A DNA stretch of 56,575 nucleotides, the filler included, from Dugesia japonica (lineage: Eukaryota): NCBI GenBank assembly GCA_001938525.1. It is 5 parts of 5 records of this genome, joined end to end, with 100 filler letters (N's around TTAATTAATTAA, not from the genome) between each part and the next. Parts side by side here need not be neighbours in the genome. Positions count along the whole stretch, not along the records: positions 37,794 to 48,367 come from MQRL01633637.1; 4 more parts are not named here. One strand, 5' to 3'. Each line of letters starts with the position of its first letter. Within the stretch, counting starts at the first letter, position 1. Below, in pieces: positions 37,794-48,367 of the stretch. The position numbers and the translations under genes are program-made. Below the pieces are notes generated by a model, which was given only the letters and a program-made list of their open reading frames with translations, was not told the DNA's origin and did not search any database.

Positions 37794-38348
37794 AAAATAT
37801 TTTGGTCTTATTTTTTTTCCATCTTTTATTAATCTTCTTATTGTATCTTTTTCATTTCTACCAATTGATAAAGGTAATATTAATTGACCATTAACCATTT
37901 GACTATTTGGCATATCAACAATATTTCCACTATCCATTTGAATAATTCGTGTTGCATTTGGATGAAGTTTTAAATTAAATTTTGGTGGATAAAATTCTTC
38001 TAATTGTGGTAATGGTTTAAATGTATTTCTTTTTAATAATTTTAAATTTTCTGGGTTATTAATAATTACTAAATTCTCTGGTGTTTCAATGTTAAATGTT
38101 TCACTTTCAGTTTCAAATTGTCCGGAAGCCAGCGAAGCGCATTCAGAACTTTCACTTTCACTTCCTTCTTGATCATTTCTCATTTCTATATATTCTGATT
38201 CTGAAAATTGGGATTCACTTTCACTTTCACTTTCTGAATTAATTAAATTATCAAGTGTTGTTATTAAACTTTTTAATTCTTTTTTCATCTTCTCACTAGA
38301 TTTTATTTTAGGTAATACATCTTCAATTTTACTTGTTACATCTTCCAT
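37794..38348 (-). CDS. Polinton hypothetical protein with Ser/Glu-rich linker (truncated by spacer)
   Basis: Open ~185 codons, co-oriented with the element; no recognised family. Confidence 0.55.
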
Positions 38349-38454
38349 TGCTTTGCTATTTCTTAAGTATATAATTTGAGACTCGTGTGTGTCAGATTTT
38401 AGATTTTATATTTTAGATTTTATATAAAACATGTAACATGAAACATCCGACATC

Positions 38455-39045
38455 TTATTGCATTCTTAGCTTCGCTCTCATTTCATTTATAACTTTAGTT
38501 TGATTTTCTAATATTATTTTTAAATTTTCATCTTTTACTTTTTTATGTCCAGATATTAATTCATGAACTTCATTCACCATATTTTTACTTATAAGTAATT
38601 CATCATCAGTTAGTATTTCATCATTAAGTGCTTTTTGCTGAAATGAGAATAATTTATTTTTAACACATTCTAGTTTATTTATTAACTTTTCATATTTATC
38701 TTTTCTTGAATTAATTAATGATGAATTTAATGTGCCAATAACTGGTAAAATGGAAATTGCACCAGTAATTAATGGTTTACCAATTGTTGTAAGTGCAAAT
38801 CCAATTGGAGTAATTAATATAACACCACCAATTCCAATTATAACACCAACACATATTTGTGTATAATTTATAGCCAAATCTATTCTGATCCATCTTTTAT
38901 AGATTTTCTTATAATGTTTAATTTTATCTTTAATATAATAAAGATCATTTTCAAAATCTTTTACTCTAGATAATGCAAGTTTATTTTTTAAATCTAAAAT
39001 TGTGTAATCTTCATGTAGGCTAGTATATAACTTTTCTGTGTCCAT
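38455..39045 (-). CDS. Polinton-associated predicted membrane protein
   Basis: Intact 196-aa ORF with Gly-rich hydrophobic hairpin and KALNDEILTDDEL, like the KALxDxxIxDxEF motif I recall from invertebrate Polinton ORFs. Confidence 0.65.
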   Translation of the reverse strand: MDTEKLYTSLHEDYTILDLKNKLALSRVKDFENDLYYIKDKIKHYKKIYKRWIRIDLAINYTQICVGVIIGIGGVILITPIGFALTTIGKPLITGAISILPVIGTLNSSLINSRKDKYEKLINKLECVKNKLFSFQQKALNDEILTDDELLISKNMVNEVHELISGHKKVKDENLKIILENQTKVINEMRAKLRMQ

Positions 39046-39050
39046 TTTCT

Positions 39051-41028
39051 TTATGATAAAGTTAAATACTTTAAATTTATTCCTTCTGGTAAAACTATTT
39101 CAATATAATTAATAACGGTTTCACTGCTTTCTTTAAAAATAATAATAGTTTTATTAGAATGTGTAAATGTTTTTATCTTAACATTAATTTTAATGACATA
39201 TGTAAAATTTTCAATTTTAGAATAACCATTAATATTTATTTTTACTTTTCTATTAATGTTTATGTGTAAACTAATCTGATAAACATTTCTCTTTTCTTTT
39301 AAAATCAAAATCATGAACATATTTTTCTAAAATACTAAAATGTGGAAGATTATCTTTTACTTCTTTAATTGAAAATAGTAAATGTGGATTTGAATAATAA
39401 GGNNNNNNNNNNNNNNNNNNNNNNNNNNNNNNNNNNNNNNNNNNNNNNNNNNNNNNNNNNNNNNNNNNNNNNNNNNNNNNNNNNNNNNNNNNNNNNNNNN
39501 NNNNNNNNNNNNNNNNNNNNNNNNNNNNNNNNNNNNNNNNNNNNNNNNNNNNNNNNNNNNGTAAAATTATTAGAATAAAGTTAATATTAAGATCTTGATT
39601 AACTACACTACTTTCAACATTAATATTAATATCATAACCATCTTTTAATCTAACATATAAAAATGATACTGCAATTTTATTAATTTTAGTGACATATGCA
39701 AATTTTTCCATTTGTCCACATTCACCTTTAATATTTATAACTATTCTTCCAATAACTTTAGTATGTAAAGTAATATTTAAAATTTTTCCATTCTTTTTGA
39801 TAAAATTAAAATCATGAACATATTTTTCTAAAAAAAAAAATATTGATCTTTAATTGAAAATATTACATTTGGGTTTATATAATAAGGTAGGTAATTAACA
39901 AAAATTTCTTTTATAGCTTGAATATTTGAAGTTTTAAAAAAAAACATTAATTTTATCAATATAAATTTTATGGAGTTTTGGTTTAAATATTTTAAACATT
40001 TTCTTAAAATATTCAAGCATTTCTAATCTATATAAACTAACACTTAATTCACTTATATAAATTTCTTTTGGTAAAATTATTTCAATATAATTAATAATGG
40101 TTTCAGTGCTTTCATAAAAAATTTTAATACTATCATCTTTAGGTTTATATAAAAATGATTGTGAAATATTATTTATTTTAATGATGTATGTAAATGTTTC
40201 AATTTTAATAGAACCAAATATATATATACTAATTTTTTCTTTTATTTTTGTATGTCAAGATATTTCTTTACCTTTTCTTTTAAAATTAAAATCATTAACA
40301 CATTTATCGATAAAAGAATAATAACGGGAGTAATTAAAATTATCTCATAAGTACTAACTGTAAAATCATAATTTAAGAAATTATCAAGTATTTCTTTTAA
40401 GTTTTGAAGTGATGAATCTGTAAGTGTTTCTTTATAAGTTTTAAATAAAACATCAATTTTATCACTATATATTTTATGTTGTTTTGATTTTACTATTTTA
40501 ATTTCTTCAGTTAATTTTAAAATTTTTGGTCTAAAATTTTCTATAAGGGATTTAATATTATTAATAAGATTCATATGCTGATCAAATGTTTTCTTATCTA
40601 AATCATCATCTAATTTATTAATTTTAACATTTAAAATGTCAATGTCTTTTTTAATTTTACGTATATCACCATAGTCTAATTTTTTTAAATGAATTAATTA
40701 ATCACTTCTTTTATATGGAAAAGGTTCTTTTTATTTTATATTTATTTTTTTTATTTTATATTTAATTTATTTTATCAAATGTTTCTTTATTACAGTATTT
40801 AATTAAGATATTATCCATCTTTAATTTAAGTAGTTTAATATATTTTAAATTAACTGCATCAATTAAAGCTTTAGGTTCTTCTGTTATTTTTAAAGATGTT
40901 ATTGTGTCACTTGTCTTATTTACAAATTTATTTTCATTGTATGCATCTGACATTTTAAGCTTAGCATCAACACTTTTTAATACTTGTGTAGTATTTAGAT
41001 TTAATATATTTTCACCAAACTTATTCAT
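39051..41028 (-). pseudogene. fragmented fibre/receptor-binding-like protein with three tandem C-terminal domains
   Basis: MNKFG start, KFVNKTSDT..PKALIDAVNLKYI motif, coiled-coil segment, then three ~480-500-bp paralogous units. Confidence 0.5.
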
Positions 41029-41467
41029 TCTTTTCTAATAGTGAATTATAAAGTGTTAACATTTCAGATATAATATCATCAAACTCACTTCGTTCGTTCA
41101 TCTTATATAAAAAATAAATACATAATACACCACATATTTTAGTTCCAAAATGTTGAACTTGAATTTCATTATATTTCGTGACAAACTTTTCAATTTTATC
41201 TAAAGGTTTTAAACCAAAAGAGTCAAAGTAAAATCCGTTAGTGTAACATGTCCAATGTATTCCATTTTGATTTGAATTTTGATAATTAAAAATATAATTC
41301 GTATTATTTACACTGAGCGCTTGCGCCCAATTTAAGTTTAAAATCTCATCTTTCATATATATTTCTAAATCCATTTCTAAAAAGTTAGCAATTGAATATA
41401 AATCAAAATTTGTAGTTATATTAATTCCAAATGTTTTTAAAAAGTCTAATAAGTTGTAATCTGTCAT
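41021..41467 (-). CDS. adenain-like (C5) cysteine maturation protease
   Basis: NGIHWTCY...YFDSFG...QVQHFGTKICGVLCIYFL: His, Asp, Gln and Cys catalytic motifs intact. Confidence 0.9.
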   Translation of the reverse strand: MTDYNLLDFLKTFGINITTNFDLYSIANFLEMDLEIYMKDEILNLNWAQALSVNNTNYIFNYQNSNQNGIHWTCYTNGFYFDSFGLKPLDKIEKFVTKYNEIQVQHFGTKICGVLCIYFLYKMNERSEFDDIISEMLTLYNSLLEKNE

Positions 41468-41504
41468 GGCTATTTATTAAATGTTAAATGTAACACGAAA
41501 CCTT

Positions 41505-42128
41505 TTACATTCGATACTTTCGTAAATGAACTAAAATTGTAATTGTTTCTTGGTTAAAATCTACGGTTTTAAAATGTTCATCTACAACAGTAAATTTTAA
41601 TCTTGAAATGTAATAAGTATTAATTTTAGAATAAGTTGTTGTTGTTGGTCTGTCAAGAATTTTATATCCTAAACCAACTGTATTAATTGGAAATGAATAT
41701 AATAAATTTATTTGTTCAGTATTTCCTATTTCAGATTTTACATAACTACCTTTAACAATATTACAAGTTATATTTATTGTGTTAATATTTGAAATGTCAA
41801 TTTTATTTTCTGAGAAATGATCTCCTGGTTGATAAGTTTTAGGAATGTTATCATTTCACATTTTGCAGTTGCTGTATTGGCTAAAATTTCTATTTCATAT
41901 ATTTTTAATTTATCTGATATTGCTTTTACTTCATATGATCCAGGTTCTAATTTAGCTTCTTTACTATCAACAGTAAATTTATTATTTAAATTTGTTATAA
42001 TAAAAATAATATTGTAACATGAAAAAACAAATTAAACTAAGTTCATATTCTGAATCTAATTCTAAAGGATATTTTATATCTAATATTAAATCTTGTTCTT
42101 TTCCAACTACTAAGAATTGATGTGACAT
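41505..42128 (-). pseudogene. Polinton minor capsid (penton-like) protein, frameshifted
   Basis: MSHQF...YPLELDSEYELSL...LEPGSYEV...INITCNIVKGSY...LLYSF...GYKILDRP...YISRLKFTVVDE...VDFNQETITILVHLRK. Confidence 0.75.
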
Positions 42129-42279
42129 TTTCTATAAATAAACTTTAGCTTGCACAGCAAGCTTTTGTTAAACTTAAAATGTTTTGTATTAAATGTTAAC
42201 ATTTTACATTATCACAATTAAACCCCACTTCGTGGGCATGTTAATTTTTAAAATATTTAGCTTTATATTTATCATAAAT

Positions 42280-42990
42280 CTTATTAGATATTAAACCCAT
42301 CATCTTTAATTTTTACATGTCTTTTTAATTTCTTCATGTAAATTGCTATGTCCTGATTTTGTTGCTGAAATTAATAATGTTAACTTTTCAAATAAATTTA
42401 TAGGATTAAGAGCATTTATTCTAGCTTTACCTTTTGGTCTACCTTTTTTTTAGCTGTTAAAAATTTACAGTGTTCATCATCTTAAGTTACTTTTACCATT
42501 TTAGTTAAATATAATGAAATTAAATTTTTTGCATCATCATCTTTGTTTATCTTATCTCTATTTCCTAAAATTATTTCTAATAATTTTTCATTAAAGGTGT
42601 AACTTTTTCATCTATATTATAATATTTTGCATTACCCCTTTGATAAAAATATAACTCATCATCATTTCCTGGAAATTTTATTGTTAAACATTTTTTATCA
42701 TTAATAACTGTCTTATATATTTTTGGTTTTGTTAATTCTGTTAATCCATTTTCTTTAGGTTTTAAAAAAGGAAGATAAAATTGTTGTATTTCTTTTTTTC
42801 TTAATACCTCAATAATTTTTTCTTCTATTAGTTCTTCTTTTTCTATTTTTGGTTCTATTATTTCTTCTTCTATTATTGGTTTTTCTATTATTGGTTCTAT
42901 CTTTTGAGTTTGACTTTTTTCTATTGCTGAAATTATTGGTTGTTGCATAAAAGATAATTCACTTTGTATGTTTCTCGAATCAATTACATT
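42280..42990 (-). pseudogene. Polinton conserved hypothetical protein, disrupted
   Basis: ORF 42577-42948 plus downstream LNPINLFEKLTLLISATKSGHSNLHEEI, resembling the DPNELxxRLxLLxAxxxAGN motif of Polinton ORFs. Confidence 0.55.
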
Positions 42991-43047
42991 ACCACAGAAA
43001 AAATCATTATACTTTTAATTAAAGCTTTTAATTCTTGAATTCTTTCT

Positions 43048-43560
43048 TCAATTTGTTTCGTGCCCATATCTATTTCTATAAGGATTTAAATAAATACCTT
43101 CACCTTTCCATGGGTTTAAATAAATACCATTACCTTGTTTAATTATTTTAATTCCTTCTTTAAAGTTTTTTGTTACTTCTTTTAAGTAAGGATCTTCAAT
43201 TATATTCTTTAAATATTTATGAATAGCCTTTCCTTGCCATGGATTTAAATAAATACCGCTACCAGATGTGGATGTTTCTTTTGATTTATCCAACATCTCG
43301 ATTTCTTTTTGTTTTTTAATTGCTTCTTTTGAACTAGCTACAGTAGATGCAATTCCAGATGCAATTCCTGCTGTTCCACCTAATGCATCGATAACTGCAG
43401 GTATTGCAGCTAAAAATGCAAATCCACCCTNACTCCTTCGGGATCTAAGTTCATCCTTTACTTTTTTAGAAATTTAATNATTTTTACCATCTATCTTTAC
43501 AGATTTACATTTTTTAGAATTAACTATTTTTTCTAATTCTTCTTCTGTTGGGTTGCTCAT
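43048..43560 (-). pseudogene. putative virion core / membrane-penetration protein
   Basis: GGFAFLAAIPAVIDALGGTAGIASGIASTV followed by three GxGIYLNP(W/Y) repeats; two N bases lie near the frame break. Confidence 0.7.
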
Positions 43561-43563
43561 TTT

Positions 43564-46500
43564 CTATAATAAAAAATTACAAGTTAAAGTTATATTTATT
43601 AAGTCTAATCTTAAATGCCATTGATTACACAAAGAGCATTCATATTCATTTCCATGTGGCCATGTTGTTTTTTTTCCTTCACTTTTTTCAATAATTCTTT
43701 TATCATCATATCCTGTTAATCCTATCTTTTATTGTTCTACAGTTTCAATTTCATGTAAGTTAGATCTTAATGAATAATTTTTTCCATAAATTATTTTTTT
43801 AGAATCATCTAAAATTTCATCAAAATCTTTCATCAAGTGAGGACTGTTTTTCTTTAAACCTTTATTTTTAAAATCAAACTTTATTTGTCTTTTAACTTTA
43901 TCAATCCACGTAAAACCATAAGATTTTGCTTTTATAAAATTAGCTTGAATTATATCAGAATAAGTCATTTCCCAATAAACTTTCTAATTTTCCAAAATTA
44001 TCTCTTCCAATTATCTCTACAAATATTGAATCAGTGTTTTTTATAATTAATGGAAATTTACAATTAAATGTACCATCACTTGTTTCAATATCATAAACAT
44101 CTTCTACACCTTCTCTTAAAAATCTAACACTTTGCACATTATATGAAACATCTTCTATTTCTCCAAGTTCAAATTCACCTGTAATAAATAAATTNNAGCT
44201 ACAATAAAATGCTTTGGCTAAAGATATTTTATCTGGAAATGATCTATTTCTAAATTTTAATCGTTCACCCATTATCTCATTGTGTAATAAGATAGTTTTT
44301 TTAGTTAATTTGGTTGGTTTAATTTCTTTACCTTTATGATCTAACAGTGAATGATCTTCTGTTACATCTACAATTCCAAAATGAGTTCTAACTCTATAAA
44401 TCTTTTTATTTGTAGTGTGTTTTATTACTTTCTTTAATGGAACCCAATCACTTTTAGTCCAAATTTTATAATCTTCAGGATAAGAATAAAATTAACCATT
44501 ATATTTATTGTAATAGTAAGGTTTTGATATTTCTGAAATCTTTTTTATTATAACTTTATAATTTTTTAGTAGTAATGTTGGAGTGTCAGCTGTTACACTA
44601 TCACTGTAATGTATTTTATAATTATCATTTCCAAGTAATGGATCCATTTGATTATAAATAAAGTCGTACATTACTTCTTTTGCATATTCTAAAATGGTAA
44701 ATCCTATATATGGAAATTTATTATATTTTAATTTTCCTTTTATCATGTGCATTGCTGCAACATTTGCTTCATTGCTATCATTCATTGTGAAAATTTTACT
44801 AGACTTAAAATTTATTTTACTTGCGAACTTTTGATAGTCTCTGTCGCTATCTACAATTTCTATGTTGCATCTATTTCTAATATTTTCTAAGGTTTTTCCA
44901 AAAAAATGCATTCAACATTAATTTATAAATATAATCACCAAAGACATCTTTAATTCTTTTTGATTCTTTTCTTAATGTTATAATTTGTGAACATGATTTT
45001 TAAACCATGGAGATGTTGGCATTTTAATTTTCTTGTGAACATTTTTTAGTATTACACCTAGTTTTAAATATAAATTTAATGTACTTCCTAGAACTACATA
45101 ATTTTTCTTATTGAATTGATTTAGTGTTAATTGAATATTTTCCTATCCAATTTTTTTATTAAATGATTTTTGGTAATCACTTAACATGTCTTCTGTGATA
45201 TTTATTCTTTCAGGTGCTAATGGATAATATTTAGTTTTATTATGAATTTCTCTTGGATAATCAAGATCAACTTCATAAACAAAACTAATTTTATCATTTG
45301 ACATTTCATATGTCAACTCATTGCACTTGTTTAATTCACATGTGGTTAGTGGTCTAGTCATACAACTAGAATATAAACTATTTTTGTCAATATATTTTAT
45401 AAATGTTTCTTCTAATAAATCATCAAGATAATCATCTAGAATGAAATCATGTGTCTTCATCATTTTTATTAAATCTTCAAACTCTGCTTTATTTAATTGT
45501 TTAGTATATGGATCTCGTAATTTATTACAACTAAAAACTTGACGTTCGCCACAAACACCAGAATATCCACCTCTAATTCCTGATTCAATCATTAAGAAAA
45601 TGTCAAATGTTTTAGATTTAGCATATTTTAAATTAACATTTGCATTTAACATTCCTGTATCCCATGCATATCCTAGTGCTGAATATGAATAACACAGATC
45701 TAATTTAATAATATTATTTAAACACGAATCTCTATAGTTTTCTAAAAAGTCAGTTAGAATTAATACATCTAACTTTATATAGTGTAACATGTAACACCAC
45801 ATATTATCATATCCGCAAAAGTCATTCAGAAATATTTGATAATCTTCATCAGATATTTTGTTTTGATTTTATGTGTTAAAGAAATCTTCTTTTGTTGGTA
45901 TTCTGTTAGATTTAAATAATTCTTCAACTTCTGTTATACTGTCACCTTTCACATATTCATATGGGAAACTTACTTTTTTCAGTCTTAAATTAAATGAATT
46001 TAAAATTGGATAATTATTAGCTTGTGTTAGTAATTTTCCCATTACTTCAACTGTTGTAAATGGAAGTAATCTTGCCGAATCAAGAAATCTAATATTTCTA
46101 AATTGAAAAGAAATATAATTATCTGATGAATGTAGAATTATCCTTTTTACATTTCCTGGAAAGTTTATTATTGGTTTTCTAAAAAATAAATGGTTATTAT
46201 AACCTGATGCGTTATGAAAATAAAATGGTATAAATAAATTCTTTATACTTTTATCATTTATGTTACATTTATTAAATGAATATCCTCTAAATTCACCATT
46301 AAAATGATTATGATCTTTAACTGGCTCCACTATTTTTTTCACAATATCTACATTTTGTGTTAGGTGTAAAATCTGGAACTTCACTTGTAATTTCTAATAT
46401 TAATTTATTATCTTTTATATCTTGTAATTTATTATTAGTTTCTTCTAAAAATTTAAAAAATTCATCATAAATATTTTCTCCTGCAAATTCATAATATTTG

Positions 46501-47291
46501 CTTTCTAATAAATCTTGATAATCTGATTTTAAATAAACACCTAAAGATAAAGCTTTTTGCTTTTTAGTTAGAATGTTTGTGTATGCTTCAAAATCTCCAA
46601 TTAATACAAATGGAATTTTATTTTTCTGGTAAAATTTATTAAAATAATAATAATCATTATGTTGAAAAACAATGTTGTTTGGTTTATGGTTAATACACAT
46701 TTCTTGATGTTTTTTTAAAACTTCTATATTTGAATAACAGTTCATACAGCGCAAGCATGGATAATTTGTATTAGTATTTTTTACAAAGAATACAGTTACA
46801 TCTCTACATAAAAAGTAATGATTTTTATACACTAATAAGTTACATTTATTTTCTTCAGGATTTGGTTTTATTATATAATGTGAAATGTATAATGGTTACA
46901 GTTTTTTATTATCATTTACTGAAAATACATTTATTTGAAAATTATTTAATTTCTCAAATTTAGTTATATCATCAATGTTCATAGGAAAATTAAATCCATC
47001 ATATTTTAAATCTGTTAAATGTGGAATGTAATTACTTAAATATGTTGGATTATCAAAGAAATACTTGTGAGCTAAGATTGAATATAGAAAAAATTTGTCA
47101 TCTTTATTTTCTATATTAATAACTCCATGTTTTTTAAAAGGAAGTTTACAATATGTTGCTCCAACTAATGATTTATATTTAGAAAGATCTAATTTAAAAT
47201 CAATTATATGAGGCATCGTCCATCCTGAACCTTTCCTAAAGAAATGAAACTTCCATTTAAATTTCTTTGTATATTTCTTGATGAATCCCAT
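43564..47291 (-). pseudogene. protein-primed family B DNA polymerase (pPolB), multiple stops/frameshifts, intein-containing
   Basis: GSGW..INIENKDDKFFLYSILAH; GDFEA; VKDH..G.FRG..NKCN; FHNASGY; FLDS; IRGG; YIDKNSLY (motif A); KLMLNAFFGKTLEN (motif B); YSD|intein|TDS (motif C); KAKSY; KNKG; YDDKR..TWPHG. Confidence 0.95.
44036..44599 (-). mobile_element. mini-intein (Hint domain, no evident homing endonuclease) in pPolB motif C
   Basis: In-frame 188 codons: block A SVTADTPTLL; IWTKSDWVPLKKVIKH; block B IYRVRTHFGIVDVTEDHSLL; block F VYDIETSDGTF; block G IIKN then +1 Thr. One TAA at 44492-44494 and an nn at 44195-44196. Confidence 0.93.
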
Positions 47292-47405
47292 GATCTAGTT
47301 TTATATTCAATGTTCCATTTTTTAAATAATTTTTTACAGTTTTTTCATTTACATTATAAACTTTACAAAACTTATGTATAGAGTTATTTTTAAAATTATA
47401 GTCAT

Positions 47406-48017
47406 CTAACATTTTATATAAAACTGTGTCCATTTATTTATGATTTTTTTAGCATAAGCTCTATCTACTCCAGTAATTTCTTTTAGAGACGCGATTCGTT
47501 TTAATACATTAAATGAAAGCTTGTCTGTATTTAAATTTTTAACTAAAGTATTAAAACGTTTTGCGGTTAAATTTACTCTTTTATTTTTATCACTCGAATG
47601 AATTACTATAGTAATATCATCAATTATTTTTGGTTTCAATTCTTGTTTAAATTGCGATAAAACATTATTGAGTTCACCTCTCTCTTTTTGGTGGGCATCA
47701 CGGATTTCATTAATAGCTTTTAAATAAGCTTTATTCTCAGTAATAAATGAGTCAAGCAAAAAGGCACGACTTTCACTTTCTACACATTTTGAAATAATAA
47801 AAGTCATTATCCCTTTATATAAATTTTTATTATCTTCTTCTAGATTTAATTCTTCTAATGTTTCATATATTCCATGAAGAATATCTAAATGATGTTTTAC
47901 ACAATCATGTGAAAGTTCATAATCTAAATAACCTTTTATTTCATCTAAATTTGACTCATCAAATTTTTCAAATTTCTTTATTGAATTTACTAATGTACAT
48001 AAATTTAACTCACACAA
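47406..48017 (-). CDS. Polinton hypothetical ORF upstream of pPolB (possibly its N-terminal/terminal-protein part)
   Basis: 203 open codons co-oriented and adjacent to pPolB; start uncertain. Confidence 0.5.
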   Translation of the reverse strand: MCELNLCTLVNSIKKFEKFDESNLDEIKGYLDYELSHDCVKHHLDILHGIYETLEELNLEEDNKNLYKGIMTFIISKCVESESRAFLLDSFITENKAYLKAINEIRDAHQKERGELNNVLSQFKQELKPKIIDDITIVIHSSDKNKRVNLTAKRFNTLVKNLNTDKLSFNVLKRIASLKEITGVDRAYAKKIINKWTQFYIKC

Positions 48018-48367
48018 AACTTTTTTCTCTAGAACAACTTTTCTTGTTGTTATTATAGTTGTTATTATAGTTGGGGGATACTAGCGCACGGACCCACTTT
48101 TTTAAGCAATTATCGAGGGGACCCCCCGGGGAAGGCTAAGAAACACATTACGCTTGAGCTGCGTTTTTTAATTATAATTTTTGGGTTGGTTTTTTTTTCT
48201 AAGATTTTTGGGATCAAAAAGTTTTTGATCATATCAAATTTTTTTTTGATCAGATCAGTTTTTTTGATCCTGATAGTTTGTGTGTGTATTTTTAATATTA
48301 AAATTTGTGTGTGTTTGGGTTGTTAAGGTGGTTTTTAAAAAGTAGGTCAAGTTGAGTTTGTGTGTGT

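What the first reader, a model, noticed from the sequence alone, without database searches (positions are those of the whole stretch)
44036..44599. Mini-intein inserted in the catalytic motif C of a Polinton/Maverick DNA polymerase in an animal assembly
Seen: the pPolB motif YSDTDS is split as YSD | 188 in-frame codons | TDSIF. The insert has Ser1 (SVTADTP), TEDH (block B TxxH), VYDIET (block F) and a terminal KN before +1 Thr. The ORF track hides it because one TAA (44492) splits it. Established: YGD|TDS is the classic Pol-c intein site of archaeal and giant-virus PolB, and Ser-start, KN-ending inteins of this style occur in Mimivirus-type PolB. True inteins are essentially absent from animal nuclear genes. 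Inference: the intein moved between an RNA-primed nucleocytovirus PolB and a protein-primed Polinton PolB during co-infection, implying a viral or virophage-like phase. From memory, a Maverick pPolB intein has been reported in a fish, so novelty may be lineage-level; check the literature.
Basis: partly seen in the sequence, partly recalled or inferred. Interest (0 to 1): 0.95.

Follow-up and report, generated by a model that had tools for sequence, protein, structure and literature searches.

The report
Decayed giant-virus-type intein in Polinton polymerase
A self-splicing protein insert (intein) of the kind found in giant-virus DNA polymerases sits exactly inside the catalytic motif of a different, protein-primed polymerase of a Polinton/adintovirus-like element. 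The whole gene is now a dead pseudogene, and nothing here shows that its host is an animal.

Summary
On the minus strand the polymerase motif C reads ...HYSD | 188 in-frame codons | TDSIF.... The insert is a true Hint-fold mini-intein. Its two stop-free pieces match a profile of PolB mini-inteins colinearly, at E=8e-43 and 1.3e-6. 1479 database proteins match it, best E=2e-28. The model's 50 best PDB fold matches are all inteins or intein-like Hint domains. Ser1, the TxxH block, the VYD.ET block, the last Asn and Thr+1 are all kept. Its relatives sit in RNA-primed family-B polymerases at YGD|TDS. The named ones are giant-virus polymerases. None of the 150 listed relatives is a protein-primed polymerase.

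The host gene is a protein-primed PolB. Its named relatives are a coral adintovirus PolB and a coral protein. An adenain/Ulp1-type protease gene lies nearby.

The copy is dead: 8 in-frame stops, at least 2 frame changes and one ambiguous codon. Animal origin could not be tested. No held paper reports an intein in a Polinton polymerase. I class it as a new variant of a known kind, of moderate to high interest.

The parts
43729..47291 (-). [quoted passage not shown] The N-terminal limit is uncertain because no terminal-protein domain was recognised upstream.
   Evidence: Stop-free pieces map in order on a profile of six intein-free relatives, at positions 141-261, 267-487, 499-677, 682-897, 980-1061 and 1172-1217 of 1251. 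One 241-aa piece finds 67 proteins, best E=8.7e-37. Of 30 sequences aligned (29 relatives plus the window piece), 17 relatives carry Pfam PF03175. Named relatives are 'PolB [Corynactis coral adintovirus]' and an Oculina patagonica protein. Breaks: 8 in-frame stops (7 in exteins, 1 in the intein) and at least 2 frame changes.
44036..44599 (-). Mini-intein of 188 codons, pol-c allele type, with no homing-endonuclease domain.
   Evidence: It has one in-frame stop and one ambiguous codon. It keeps 33 of 41 highly conserved family columns.
44600..44608 (-). N-terminal half of polymerase motif C (Y-S-D), the last residues of the N-extein.
44027..44035 (-). C-terminal half of motif C (T-D-S). The Thr is the +1 nucleophile of the C-extein.
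46905..47246 (-). vOTU-like domain region of the pPolB.
   Evidence: BLASTP to P0220 residues 142-261, E=1e-16. The domain is named after Krupovic et al. 2024 (PMC11161782).
46244..46321 (-). HNH / endonuclease-VII-like segment between Exo I and Exo II of the pPolB.
   Evidence: It aligns to the matching segment of P0225. Many P0220-like relatives carry Pfam PF02945. It gives a weak PHROG endonuclease VII hit, E=0.034.
41021..41467 (-). CE-clan (adenain/Ulp1-like) cysteine protease gene with an intact ORF. This is a second Polinton hallmark.
   Evidence: It has 12 relatives, E down to 3e-40. H, D, Q and C are invariant in the alignment. The AF2 model has pLDDT 87.4. Foldseek hits include the CidB DUB domain, adenovirus proteinase, ASFV pS273R and SENP/Ulp1. 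The only PDB profile hits are adenovirus protease, and they are weak, E=0.7.

Best explanation
The region is a decayed copy of a Polinton/Maverick (adintovirus)-like element. Its protein-primed DNA polymerase gene carries a 188-codon mini-intein exactly between the Asp and the Thr of catalytic motif C (Y-S-D | T-D-S).

The intein belongs to the 'pol-c' allele family, otherwise found at YGD|TDS of RNA-primed family-B polymerases, mostly of giant viruses. It was most likely acquired from such a polymerase by ectopic homing or recombination at the only stretch the two polymerase families share.

In an intact ancestor the insert would have been translated as part of the polymerase precursor. It would then have removed itself by the standard class-1 route:
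1. N-O acyl shift at Ser1.
2. Transesterification to Thr+1.
3. Cyclisation of the last Asn.
4. O-N shift that restores Y-S-D-T-D-S.

The intein has no endonuclease domain, so it could not home by itself. The present copy can do none of this, because both the intein and its host gene are interrupted.

Shown here: the anatomy, the family membership, the fold, the insertion site and the decay. Inferred: the direction and route of transfer, past splicing, and the kind of host.
For: Site and frame. The N-extein alignment ends exactly at the D that precedes TDS in an intein-free relative.

Intein identity:
- 1479 hits with E<=1e-3 and 572 with E<=1e-10.
- Of the top 30, 29 carry DNA_pol_B (PF00136), 19 Intein_splicing and 6 LAGLIDADG_3. 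None carries PF03175.
- Both pieces are colinear on the intein profile.
- 33 of 41 conserved columns are kept, including every splicing nucleophile and the TxxH block.
- The relatives have the same junction types as the window.
- The AF2 model has pLDDT 86.8.
- The top 50 PDB fold matches are all inteins or intein-like Hint domains, best a PolB1 split intein.
- The nine best BFVD matches are giant-virus DNA polymerases, with TM up to 0.83.

Nesting: the nearest neighbour is 51% identical. That is typical for the family, whose median nearest-neighbour identity is 53%. The window sits five nodes deep in a neighbour-joining tree.

Host gene. Second hallmark gene.

Literature: the Mimivirus PolB intein lies at YGD|TDS with Ser1, a last Asn and Thr+1, and the Nanoarchaeum split intein lies at the same position (PMC549080). 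Viral DNA polymerases are the commonest hosts of viral inteins (PMC5784728).

Composition: the intein matches its host gene, GC 24.7% against 24.6%. The density of stops is similar in intein and exteins. Both fit an insert that was resident before the copy decayed.
Against: - The window's polymerase pieces do not reach any Pfam, PHROG or PDB threshold on their own. The pPolB assignment rests on relatives.
- Integrase, packaging ATPase and capsid genes were not found in the 10.6-kb piece. 'Polinton' therefore rests on two hallmark genes and named relatives.
- 8 of 41 conserved intein columns differ, some in the C-terminal splicing block. Even the uninterrupted ancestor's competence is not certain.
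- The best intein relative is only 45-51% identical. The donor is unsampled or the transfer is old.
- Only the best 150 of the 1479 intein relatives could be inspected.
Confidence: 0.85

Rival explanations
1. The contig is not animal. It comes from a protist, a free Polinton-like virus or virophage, or another contaminant in the assembly. On this reading the intein is not a relic in a metazoan genome.
For: GC is extremely low, 23%. The twelve nearest relatives of the protease all lie on metagenome contigs of 5 kb or less from JGI, ENA and Logan. The best pPolB relative, 39% identical, lies on a 3-kb contig. The intein family lives in giant viruses, whose known hosts are mostly protists (PMC5784728). 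Held reviews state that inteins are absent from metazoan genomes.
Against: The only named pPolB relatives are a coral adintovirus PolB and a coral protein. Many other relatives lie on contigs of 0.1-2.7 Mb, as expected of eukaryotic chromosomes. Heavy pseudogenisation fits an endogenised copy better than a free virus. Endogenisation could equally have happened in a protist.
Confidence: 0.4
2. The copy is actually intact and active, and the interruptions are assembly or sequencing errors.
For: Isolated N and NN inside the piece show local base-calling uncertainty. The codon-position GC gradient is still coding-like. All splicing nucleophiles are kept. The polymerase motifs A, B and C can still be read in the translations.
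Against: There are eight in-frame stops of three codon types plus at least two frame changes. Several conserved catalytic-motif positions in the non-polymerase domains are substituted. Substitutions that create stops are not the usual long-read error. No alternative genetic code rescues the gene, since TAA, TAG and TGA all occur in frame.
Confidence: 0.05
3. The join is an assembly chimera between a giant-virus PolB gene and a Polinton polymerase gene.
For: The insert's relatives are all from another polymerase family.
Against: Only the intein is foreign. It starts at its own first residue and ends at its own last residue, in frame. The pPolB is colinear on both sides. There is no compositional step. 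No RNA-primed PolB extein sequence is present.
Confidence: 0.02
4. The intein is an old, vertically inherited resident of one pPolB lineage rather than a transfer from a giant virus. It looks unique only because that lineage is unsampled.
For: Identity to the nearest PolB intein is only 45-51%. Composition is fully that of the host gene. The element's lineage is poorly sampled: the best pPolB relative is 39% identical and the best protease relative 51%.
Against: The window is nested inside PolB-hosted inteins, not sister to them. None of 204 retrieved pPolB-type proteins has an intein. None of the 150 listed relatives is in a pPolB. An old residence would still need an original transfer between the two polymerase families.
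Confidence: 0.2

Closest known systems
pol-c (position III) inteins of family-B DNA polymerases of Nucleocytoviricota (Mimivirus, Megavirus, Klosneuvirus, Heterosigma akashiwo virus, Marseillevirus- and Pithovirus-like MAGs) and of archaea
   Same: Same insertion point between the D and the T of the Y-x-D-T-D-S motif. Same Ser1, last Asn and Thr+1. Same Ser-Val-Thr start and Lys-Asn end. Same conserved TEDHSLL and VYD.ET blocks. Same Hint fold. Mini forms of 165-220 residues also occur.
   Different: The host protein is a protein-primed PolB (PF03175 type), not an RNA-primed PolB (PF00136 type). The residue at -2 is Ser, not Gly. This copy is interrupted, and 8 of 41 conserved columns differ.
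Polinton/Maverick (adintovirus) pPolB, for example 'PolB [Corynactis coral adintovirus]' and its coral-genome relatives
   Same: Same order of vOTU-like, Exo I, HNH/endonuclease-VII-like, Exo II-III and polymerase motifs A, B, C and KxY. 31-43% identity per piece. A CE-clan protease gene lies on the same strand.
   Different: Those polymerases have an uninterrupted motif C and no intein. The window copy is a pseudogene, and the piece shows no integrase, ATPase or capsid genes.
Endonuclease-domain insertions in Polinton pPolB (HNH and VSR in nematode, oomycete and mollusc pPolB2; Jeong et al. 2023, PMC10748475). Krupovic et al. 2024 (PMC11161782) read these as possible traces of intein invasion.
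   Same: Mobile-element-derived insertions within Polinton polymerases. The window's pPolB also has an HNH-like segment.
   Different: Those are nuclease domains with no Hint splicing domain, at other positions. Here the splicing domain itself is present with both junctions, at motif C, and has no nuclease.
Intein-bearing viral-type PolB genes endogenised in eukaryotic nuclear genomes (Klebsormidium, Tetrabaena, Hondaea; Gallot-Lavallee et al. 2023, PMC10710043)
   Same: An intein inside a virus-derived polymerase gene that resides in a eukaryotic assembly.
   Different: Those are giant-virus RNA-primed PolBs in algae and a labyrinthulomycete, not a protein-primed polymerase of a Polinton-like element.

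Membership tests
Intein (class 1, Hint fold; pol-c allele) | In-frame insertion in a host protein that is colinear on both sides | tested here: met
   with weak support. The extein pieces were compared apart and the insert was not excised.
Intein (class 1, Hint fold; pol-c allele) | Sequence homology to intein splicing domains (blocks A, B, F, G) | tested here: met
   Family profile E=8e-43 and 1.3e-6 for the two pieces. 1479 database relatives, of which 19 of the top 30 carry Pfam Intein_splicing. Curated Pfam and NCBIfam models on the pieces alone fall below their cut-offs.
Intein (class 1, Hint fold; pol-c allele) | Hint fold | tested here: met
   AF2 model of the C-ward 152 residues has pLDDT 86.8. 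The top 50 PDB matches are all inteins or BIL/Hint domains. The N-terminal 35 residues were not in the model.
Intein (class 1, Hint fold; pol-c allele) | Nucleophile at residue 1, TxxH in block B, terminal Asn, nucleophile at +1 | tested here: met
   Ser1, T-E-D-H, Asn188 and Thr+1. The penultimate residue is Lys rather than the usual His, as in about 80 of 97 relatives.
Intein (class 1, Hint fold; pol-c allele) | Insertion at the allele's own site (Y-G-D | T-D-S of PolB motif C) | tested here: met
   Y-S-D | T-D-S in the window. YGD|S.. and ..N|TDS in the relatives. Literature: PMC549080.
Intein (class 1, Hint fold; pol-c allele) | Uninterrupted reading frame and actual protein splicing | tested here: not met
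   One in-frame stop, one ambiguous codon and 8 of 41 conserved columns changed. It is an intein relic. Splicing itself cannot be tested with these tools.
[quoted passage not shown] | Homology to PF03175 proteins over the exonuclease and polymerase domains, with motifs in order | tested here: met
   The window pieces themselves give no Pfam hit. 17 of the aligned relatives do.
[quoted passage not shown] | N-terminal terminal-protein and vOTU domains, as in eukaryotic preplasmiviricot pPolBs | tested here: inconclusive
   The vOTU-like region is homologous to P0220 residues 142-261. No match was found for a terminal-protein domain upstream, but the profile there rests on one sequence.
[quoted passage not shown] | Intact gene | tested here: not met
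   8 in-frame stops and at least 2 frame changes. Several conserved catalytic-motif positions outside the polymerase motifs are substituted.
Polinton / Maverick (adintovirus-like) element | pPolB plus CE-clan (adenain/Ulp1-like) protease | tested here: met
   for the polymerase. for the protease.
Polinton / Maverick (adintovirus-like) element | Retroviral-type integrase, packaging ATPase, double and single jelly-roll capsid proteins | tested here: inconclusive
   No Pfam or PHROG hit among the other ORFs of the piece. The piece is only 10.6 kb and is cut at both ends.
Polinton / Maverick (adintovirus-like) element | Terminal inverted repeats and target-site duplication | not testable with these tools
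   The element's ends are not in the piece. No long terminal inverted repeat was found within it.
Animal (metazoan) genomic locus | Flanking host DNA of animal origin | not testable with these tools
The piece shows no recognisable host sequence.

The most novel reading that the evidence does not exclude
The element is truly endogenous in an animal genome. That would make this the first intein, as a relic, recorded in metazoan DNA. It would also be the first sequence-level trace that an ancestor of animal Mavericks/adintoviruses replicated in the same cell compartment as an intein-bearing giant virus, close enough for a polymerase intein to jump from an RNA-primed to a protein-primed PolB. This would be a virophage-like episode in the history of animal Polintons.
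Probability: 0.25. Interest if true: 0.8.

Novelty: new variant of a known kind. Interest (0 to 1): 0.62.

Why it matters
Inteins are known to keep to 'their' site across very distant homologues. The Mimivirus intein shares its site with archaeal ones (PMC549080). Here the same allele sits in a protein-primed polymerase that shares almost nothing with the usual hosts beyond the six-residue catalytic motif. This stretches how little target similarity an intein needs to colonise a new gene family.

It is also a physical-contact marker. The transfer needs the DNA of a giant-virus-type polymerase gene and of a Polinton-like element in the same cell. That bears on the debated link between Polintons, virophages and giant viruses.

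The held literature only suspects 'intein invasions' of Polinton polymerases, from orphan nuclease domains (PMC11161782). This locus shows the splicing domain itself. If the host proves to be an animal, it also qualifies the textbook statement that metazoan genomes lack inteins (PMC5784728), though only as a dead passenger of a virus-like element.

Tried and rejected
Curated profiles on the separate pieces
- Pfam, NCBIfam and PHROGs gave only sub-threshold intein hits and nothing for the polymerase.
- PDB sequence searches with polymerase pieces and with a 30-sequence profile found no polymerase.

Alternative genetic code
- Ciliate-type reassignment was rejected. All three stop codons occur in frame, and frame changes remain.

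Upstream terminal-protein domain
- Not detected.

Search for intein-bearing pPolBs
- The search with the full-length relative P0220 saturated on near-identical coral-type polymerases: 7980 hits, 120 listed.
- None of 204 pPolB-type proteins in hand has an intein. This is a narrow sample.

Flank chimerism
- Positions -3 and +4 to +6 look like RNA-primed PolB exteins, and farther positions look like pPolB.
- I give this little weight. The pPolB comparison set is essentially one lineage, and from general knowledge Y at -3 and I at +4 are common in other protein-primed polymerases.

'LLGND' duplication
- 'LLGND' occurs on both sides of the insert. I considered it as a duplication scar and rejected it by eye, because the two DNA stretches are not alike (sequence).

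Literature
- Six of the seven full-text searches used looked for an intein in a Polinton, Maverick or protein-primed polymerase. None found one. The seventh found the giant-virus PolB intein papers.
- Kapitonov & Jurka 2006 and Krupovic & Koonin 2015 are not held.
- I have an unverified memory that the former may mention inteins.

Not done
- Reading the insert through its stop as one string.
- Excising the insert.
- Fetching contigs of relatives.

- Early in my reasoning I enumerated positions of some in-frame stops from ORF bounds.
- print bounds of stop-free stretches.
Full report
**What is there**

The usable piece (37794-48367) is very AT-rich, at 23% G+C. All its long reading frames lie on the minus strand.

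Then come 188 codons from SVTADTP... to ...PLIIKN. Then comes TDSIFVEII.... The coordinates 44036-44599 are exact.

The insert holds one in-frame stop and one codon made ambiguous by two N. The N were left as they stand. As the tools require, I searched the two stop-free pieces of the insert apart throughout. I never joined them and never excised the insert.

**Is the insert an intein?**

Yes.

- Curated profiles on the pieces alone are only suggestive: Pfam Intein_splicing E=0.0058 and NCBIfam intein_Nterm E=6.8e-4, both under their cut-offs.
- The best PDB sequence hits are weak but telling: a 173-residue 'DNA-directed DNA polymerase' chain, 9hth, and the Nanoarchaeum NEQ068 split polymerase intein.
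- An exhaustive HMMER scan used the C-ward piece plus the adjoining C-extein. It found 1479 proteins at E<=1e-3 and 572 at E<=1e-10, best 2.1e-28.
- Of the 30 best hits, 29 carry Pfam DNA_pol_B, 24 the family-B exonuclease domain, 19 Intein_splicing and 6 a LAGLIDADG domain.
- I located both junctions in 97 of the 150 listed hits. They read YGD|SVT (48 cases) or close variants, and [V/I/L]KN|TDS (76 cases). Intein lengths run from 165 to 635 residues, and 28 are mini-inteins of 220 or fewer. The window reads YSD|SVT and IKN|TDS.
- A profile of those 28 mini-inteins matches the window's C-ward piece at E=8e-43 (profile positions 50-212). It matches the N-ward 35 residues at E=1.3e-6 (positions 1-35). 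The two pieces are therefore colinear on the profile.
- The window keeps the family residue in 33 of the 41 columns where at least 80% of the family agree. These include Ser1, the T-E-D-H-S-L-L block, the V-Y-D-x-E-T block and the last Asn. Eight columns differ, some of them in the C-terminal block.
- An AlphaFold2 model of the C-ward 152 residues is confident, with pLDDT 86.8 and pTM 0.78.
- Its 50 best PDB fold matches are all inteins or intein-like Hint domains. The best is the Aes123 PolB1 split intein.
- In the viral structure library the nine best matches are DNA polymerases of Nucleocytoviricota: Marseillevirus LCMAC201, Klosneuvirus KNV1, Pithovirus LCPAC302, Heterosigma akashiwo virus 01, Megavirus courdo11, a phycodnavirus, an entry with no name in the tables at hand, Marseillevirus LCMAC103 and Pandoravirus hades. 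TM-scores reach 0.83.

No endonuclease domain is present, so this is a mini-intein.

**Is the host gene a protein-primed polymerase, and is the site motif C?**

The window's polymerase pieces hit no curated profile or solved structure on their own.

One 241-residue piece finds 67 proteins, best E=8.7e-37 at 39% identity. In a 30-sequence alignment of that piece with 29 of them, 17 relatives carry Pfam PF03175, 'DNA polymerase type B, organellar and viral'.

A full-length relative, P0220 (1193 aa), came from a cluster look-up. Its close kin include 'PolB [Corynactis coral adintovirus]' and a protein of the coral Oculina patagonica. Many of them also carry PF02945, endonuclease VII.

The window's stop-free pieces fall in order on a profile of six intein-free relatives, at positions 141-261, 267-487, 499-677, 682-897, 980-1061 and 1172-1217 of 1251.

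All six relatives have an uninterrupted ...[F/H][T/S]D-TDS-L... motif. BLASTP of the N-extein piece against P0067 runs to the window's last extein residue. It ends at P0067's H-S-D, residue 250, which is followed directly by T-D-S. The 26-residue C-extein is too short for a significant score. It still ranks 2nd to 10th of 355-1168 positions when laid right after that Asp.

So the insert lies between the Asp and the Thr of motif C. This is the site homologous to the 'pol-c / position III' intein site of RNA-primed family-B polymerases (PMC549080).

**What kind of element?**

About 2.3 kb downstream on the same strand lies an intact 148-codon ORF.

- It has twelve relatives, E down to 3e-40.
- H, D, Q and C are invariant in their alignment.
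- The model is confident, pLDDT 87.4.
- Its fold matches are CE-clan cysteine proteases: the CidB deubiquitylase domain, adenovirus proteinase, ASFV pS273R and SENP/Ulp1.
- The only PDB profile hits are adenovirus protease, and they are weak, E=0.7.

The polymerase also has a vOTU-like region and an HNH-like segment, as described for Polinton polymerases (PMC11161782, PMC10748475).

Integrase, packaging ATPase and capsid genes were not recognised among the remaining ORFs. The element's ends are not in the piece. 'Polinton/adintovirus-like' is therefore well supported but not complete.

**State of the copy**

Along the frame path given by the profile there are 8 in-frame stops: six TAA, one TAG and one TGA. 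Seven are in the exteins and one in the intein. There are also at least 2 frame changes and one ambiguous codon.

Several conserved catalytic-motif positions of the non-polymerase domains carry other residues than in the relatives. No alternative genetic code removes the interruptions.

The density of stops is similar in intein and exteins. The intein's composition equals that of its host gene: GC 24.7% against 24.6%, with GC3 of 10% against 14-19%. The intein was therefore part of the gene before this copy decayed. This is a pseudogene and nothing here can splice today.

**Where did the intein come from?**

None of the 150 listed relatives matches a pPolB profile or the window's own polymerase pieces. 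None of the 204 pPolB-type proteins retrieved contains an intein.

Over 147 splicing-domain columns the window's nearest neighbour is 51% identical. That is ordinary for this family, whose median nearest-neighbour identity among 50%-level representatives is 53%. In a neighbour-joining tree the window sits five nodes deep, in clades of 2, 6, 7, 8 and 10. It is a nested, ordinary member of a family otherwise hosted by RNA-primed PolBs. Transfer from such a polymerase into the pPolB is the economical reading.

The route is inferred. The likely mechanism is cleavage or recombination at the shared Y-x-D-T-D-S coding stretch while both DNAs were in one cell. Six of the top 30 relatives still carry LAGLIDADG endonuclease domains that could have driven this.

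The immediate flanks (-3 and +4 to +6) resemble RNA-primed PolB exteins, while more distant positions resemble pPolB. That is what co-conversion would leave. The pPolB comparison set is one lineage, however, so I give this little weight.

**Host**

Nothing in the piece is host DNA.

- Hints for an animal: the named coral and adintovirus relatives, and relatives on megabase contigs.
- Hints against: the nearest protease relatives and the nearest polymerase relative lie on short metagenome contigs. The composition is extreme. Inteins are reported absent from metazoan genomes (PMC5784728).

Looking up the contigs of relatives or other copies would settle much of this.

**Literature**

- Giant-virus PolB inteins at YGD|TDS with Ser1, a last Asn and Thr+1 are well known (PMC549080).
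- Viral DNA polymerases are the commonest viral intein hosts (PMC5784728).
- Intein-bearing viral-type PolBs occur endogenised in algal nuclear genomes (PMC10710043).
- For Polintons, the held literature has only nuclease-domain insertions, read as possible intein traces (PMC11161782 citing PMC10748475).
- Six of the seven full-text searches used looked for a Hint intein in a Polinton, Maverick or protein-primed polymerase, and none found one. The seventh found the giant-virus PolB intein papers.
- Two likely sources are not held. I recall, unverified, that Kapitonov & Jurka 2006 may mention inteins.

**Verdict**

The intein, the site, the polymerase family and the giant-virus kinship hold. 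Animal origin and the co-infection story are untested.
- I class it as a new variant of a known kind: a pol-c intein in a new host polymerase family, preserved as a relic.
- Interest is moderate to high (0.62).

- Early in my reasoning I enumerated positions of some in-frame stops.
- print bounds of stop-free stretches.

Noticed in passing
window 39060-40320: Three tandem paralogous units of about 490 bp (63-87% identical over the blocks found). Each carries a small minus-strand ORF, and one unit contains the 158-N run. No family hit. This may be a small gene family of the element.
   Followed up: no
window 43048-43296 (-) and 42577-42948 (-): Two small ORFs with internal repeats. One has three GIYLNPW-like repeats (45-nt repeat D10). 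The other has an E/I/K-rich 45-nt tandem (D11). Neither hits Pfam.
   Followed up: partly
window 44027-44035 and 44600-44608, with their flanks: The extein residues next to the intein (-3 and +4 to +6) match the usual residues of RNA-primed PolB exteins. Positions farther out match pPolB relatives. This could be a co-conversion tract, but the pPolB comparison set is one lineage.
   Followed up: partly
window 43958-44650 (-): The peptide LLGND occurs both shortly before motif C and at the end of the C-extein reading frame. By eye the two DNA stretches are not alike (sequence), so this is probably chance and not a duplication scar.
   Followed up: partly
window 46244-46321, 46905-47246 and the Exo II region of the pPolB (-): Several positions that are catalytic or metal-binding in relatives (vOTU-like, HNH-like and Exo II motifs) carry other residues here, while the polymerase motifs A, B and C are kept. 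This fits decay, or an already crippled lineage.
   Followed up: partly
relatives P0355-P0366 versus P0002-P0027: The protease's relatives lie only on metagenome contigs of 5 kb or less, whereas most pPolB relatives lie on contigs of 0.1-2.7 Mb. The two genes may have differently sampled kin, or the element's own lineage may be environmental.
   Followed up: no
window 47257-47433 (-) and 47406-48017 (-): Two ORFs lie upstream of the recognisable polymerase. One has a weak helix-turn-helix hit (HTH_Mga, E=8e-4). Neither matches the terminal-protein region of the one full-length relative. They could be a diverged terminal-protein domain or separate genes.
   Followed up: partly
window 43431, 43479, 44195-44196 and 39403-39560: Isolated N, one NN inside the intein, and a 158-N run.
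   Followed up: no
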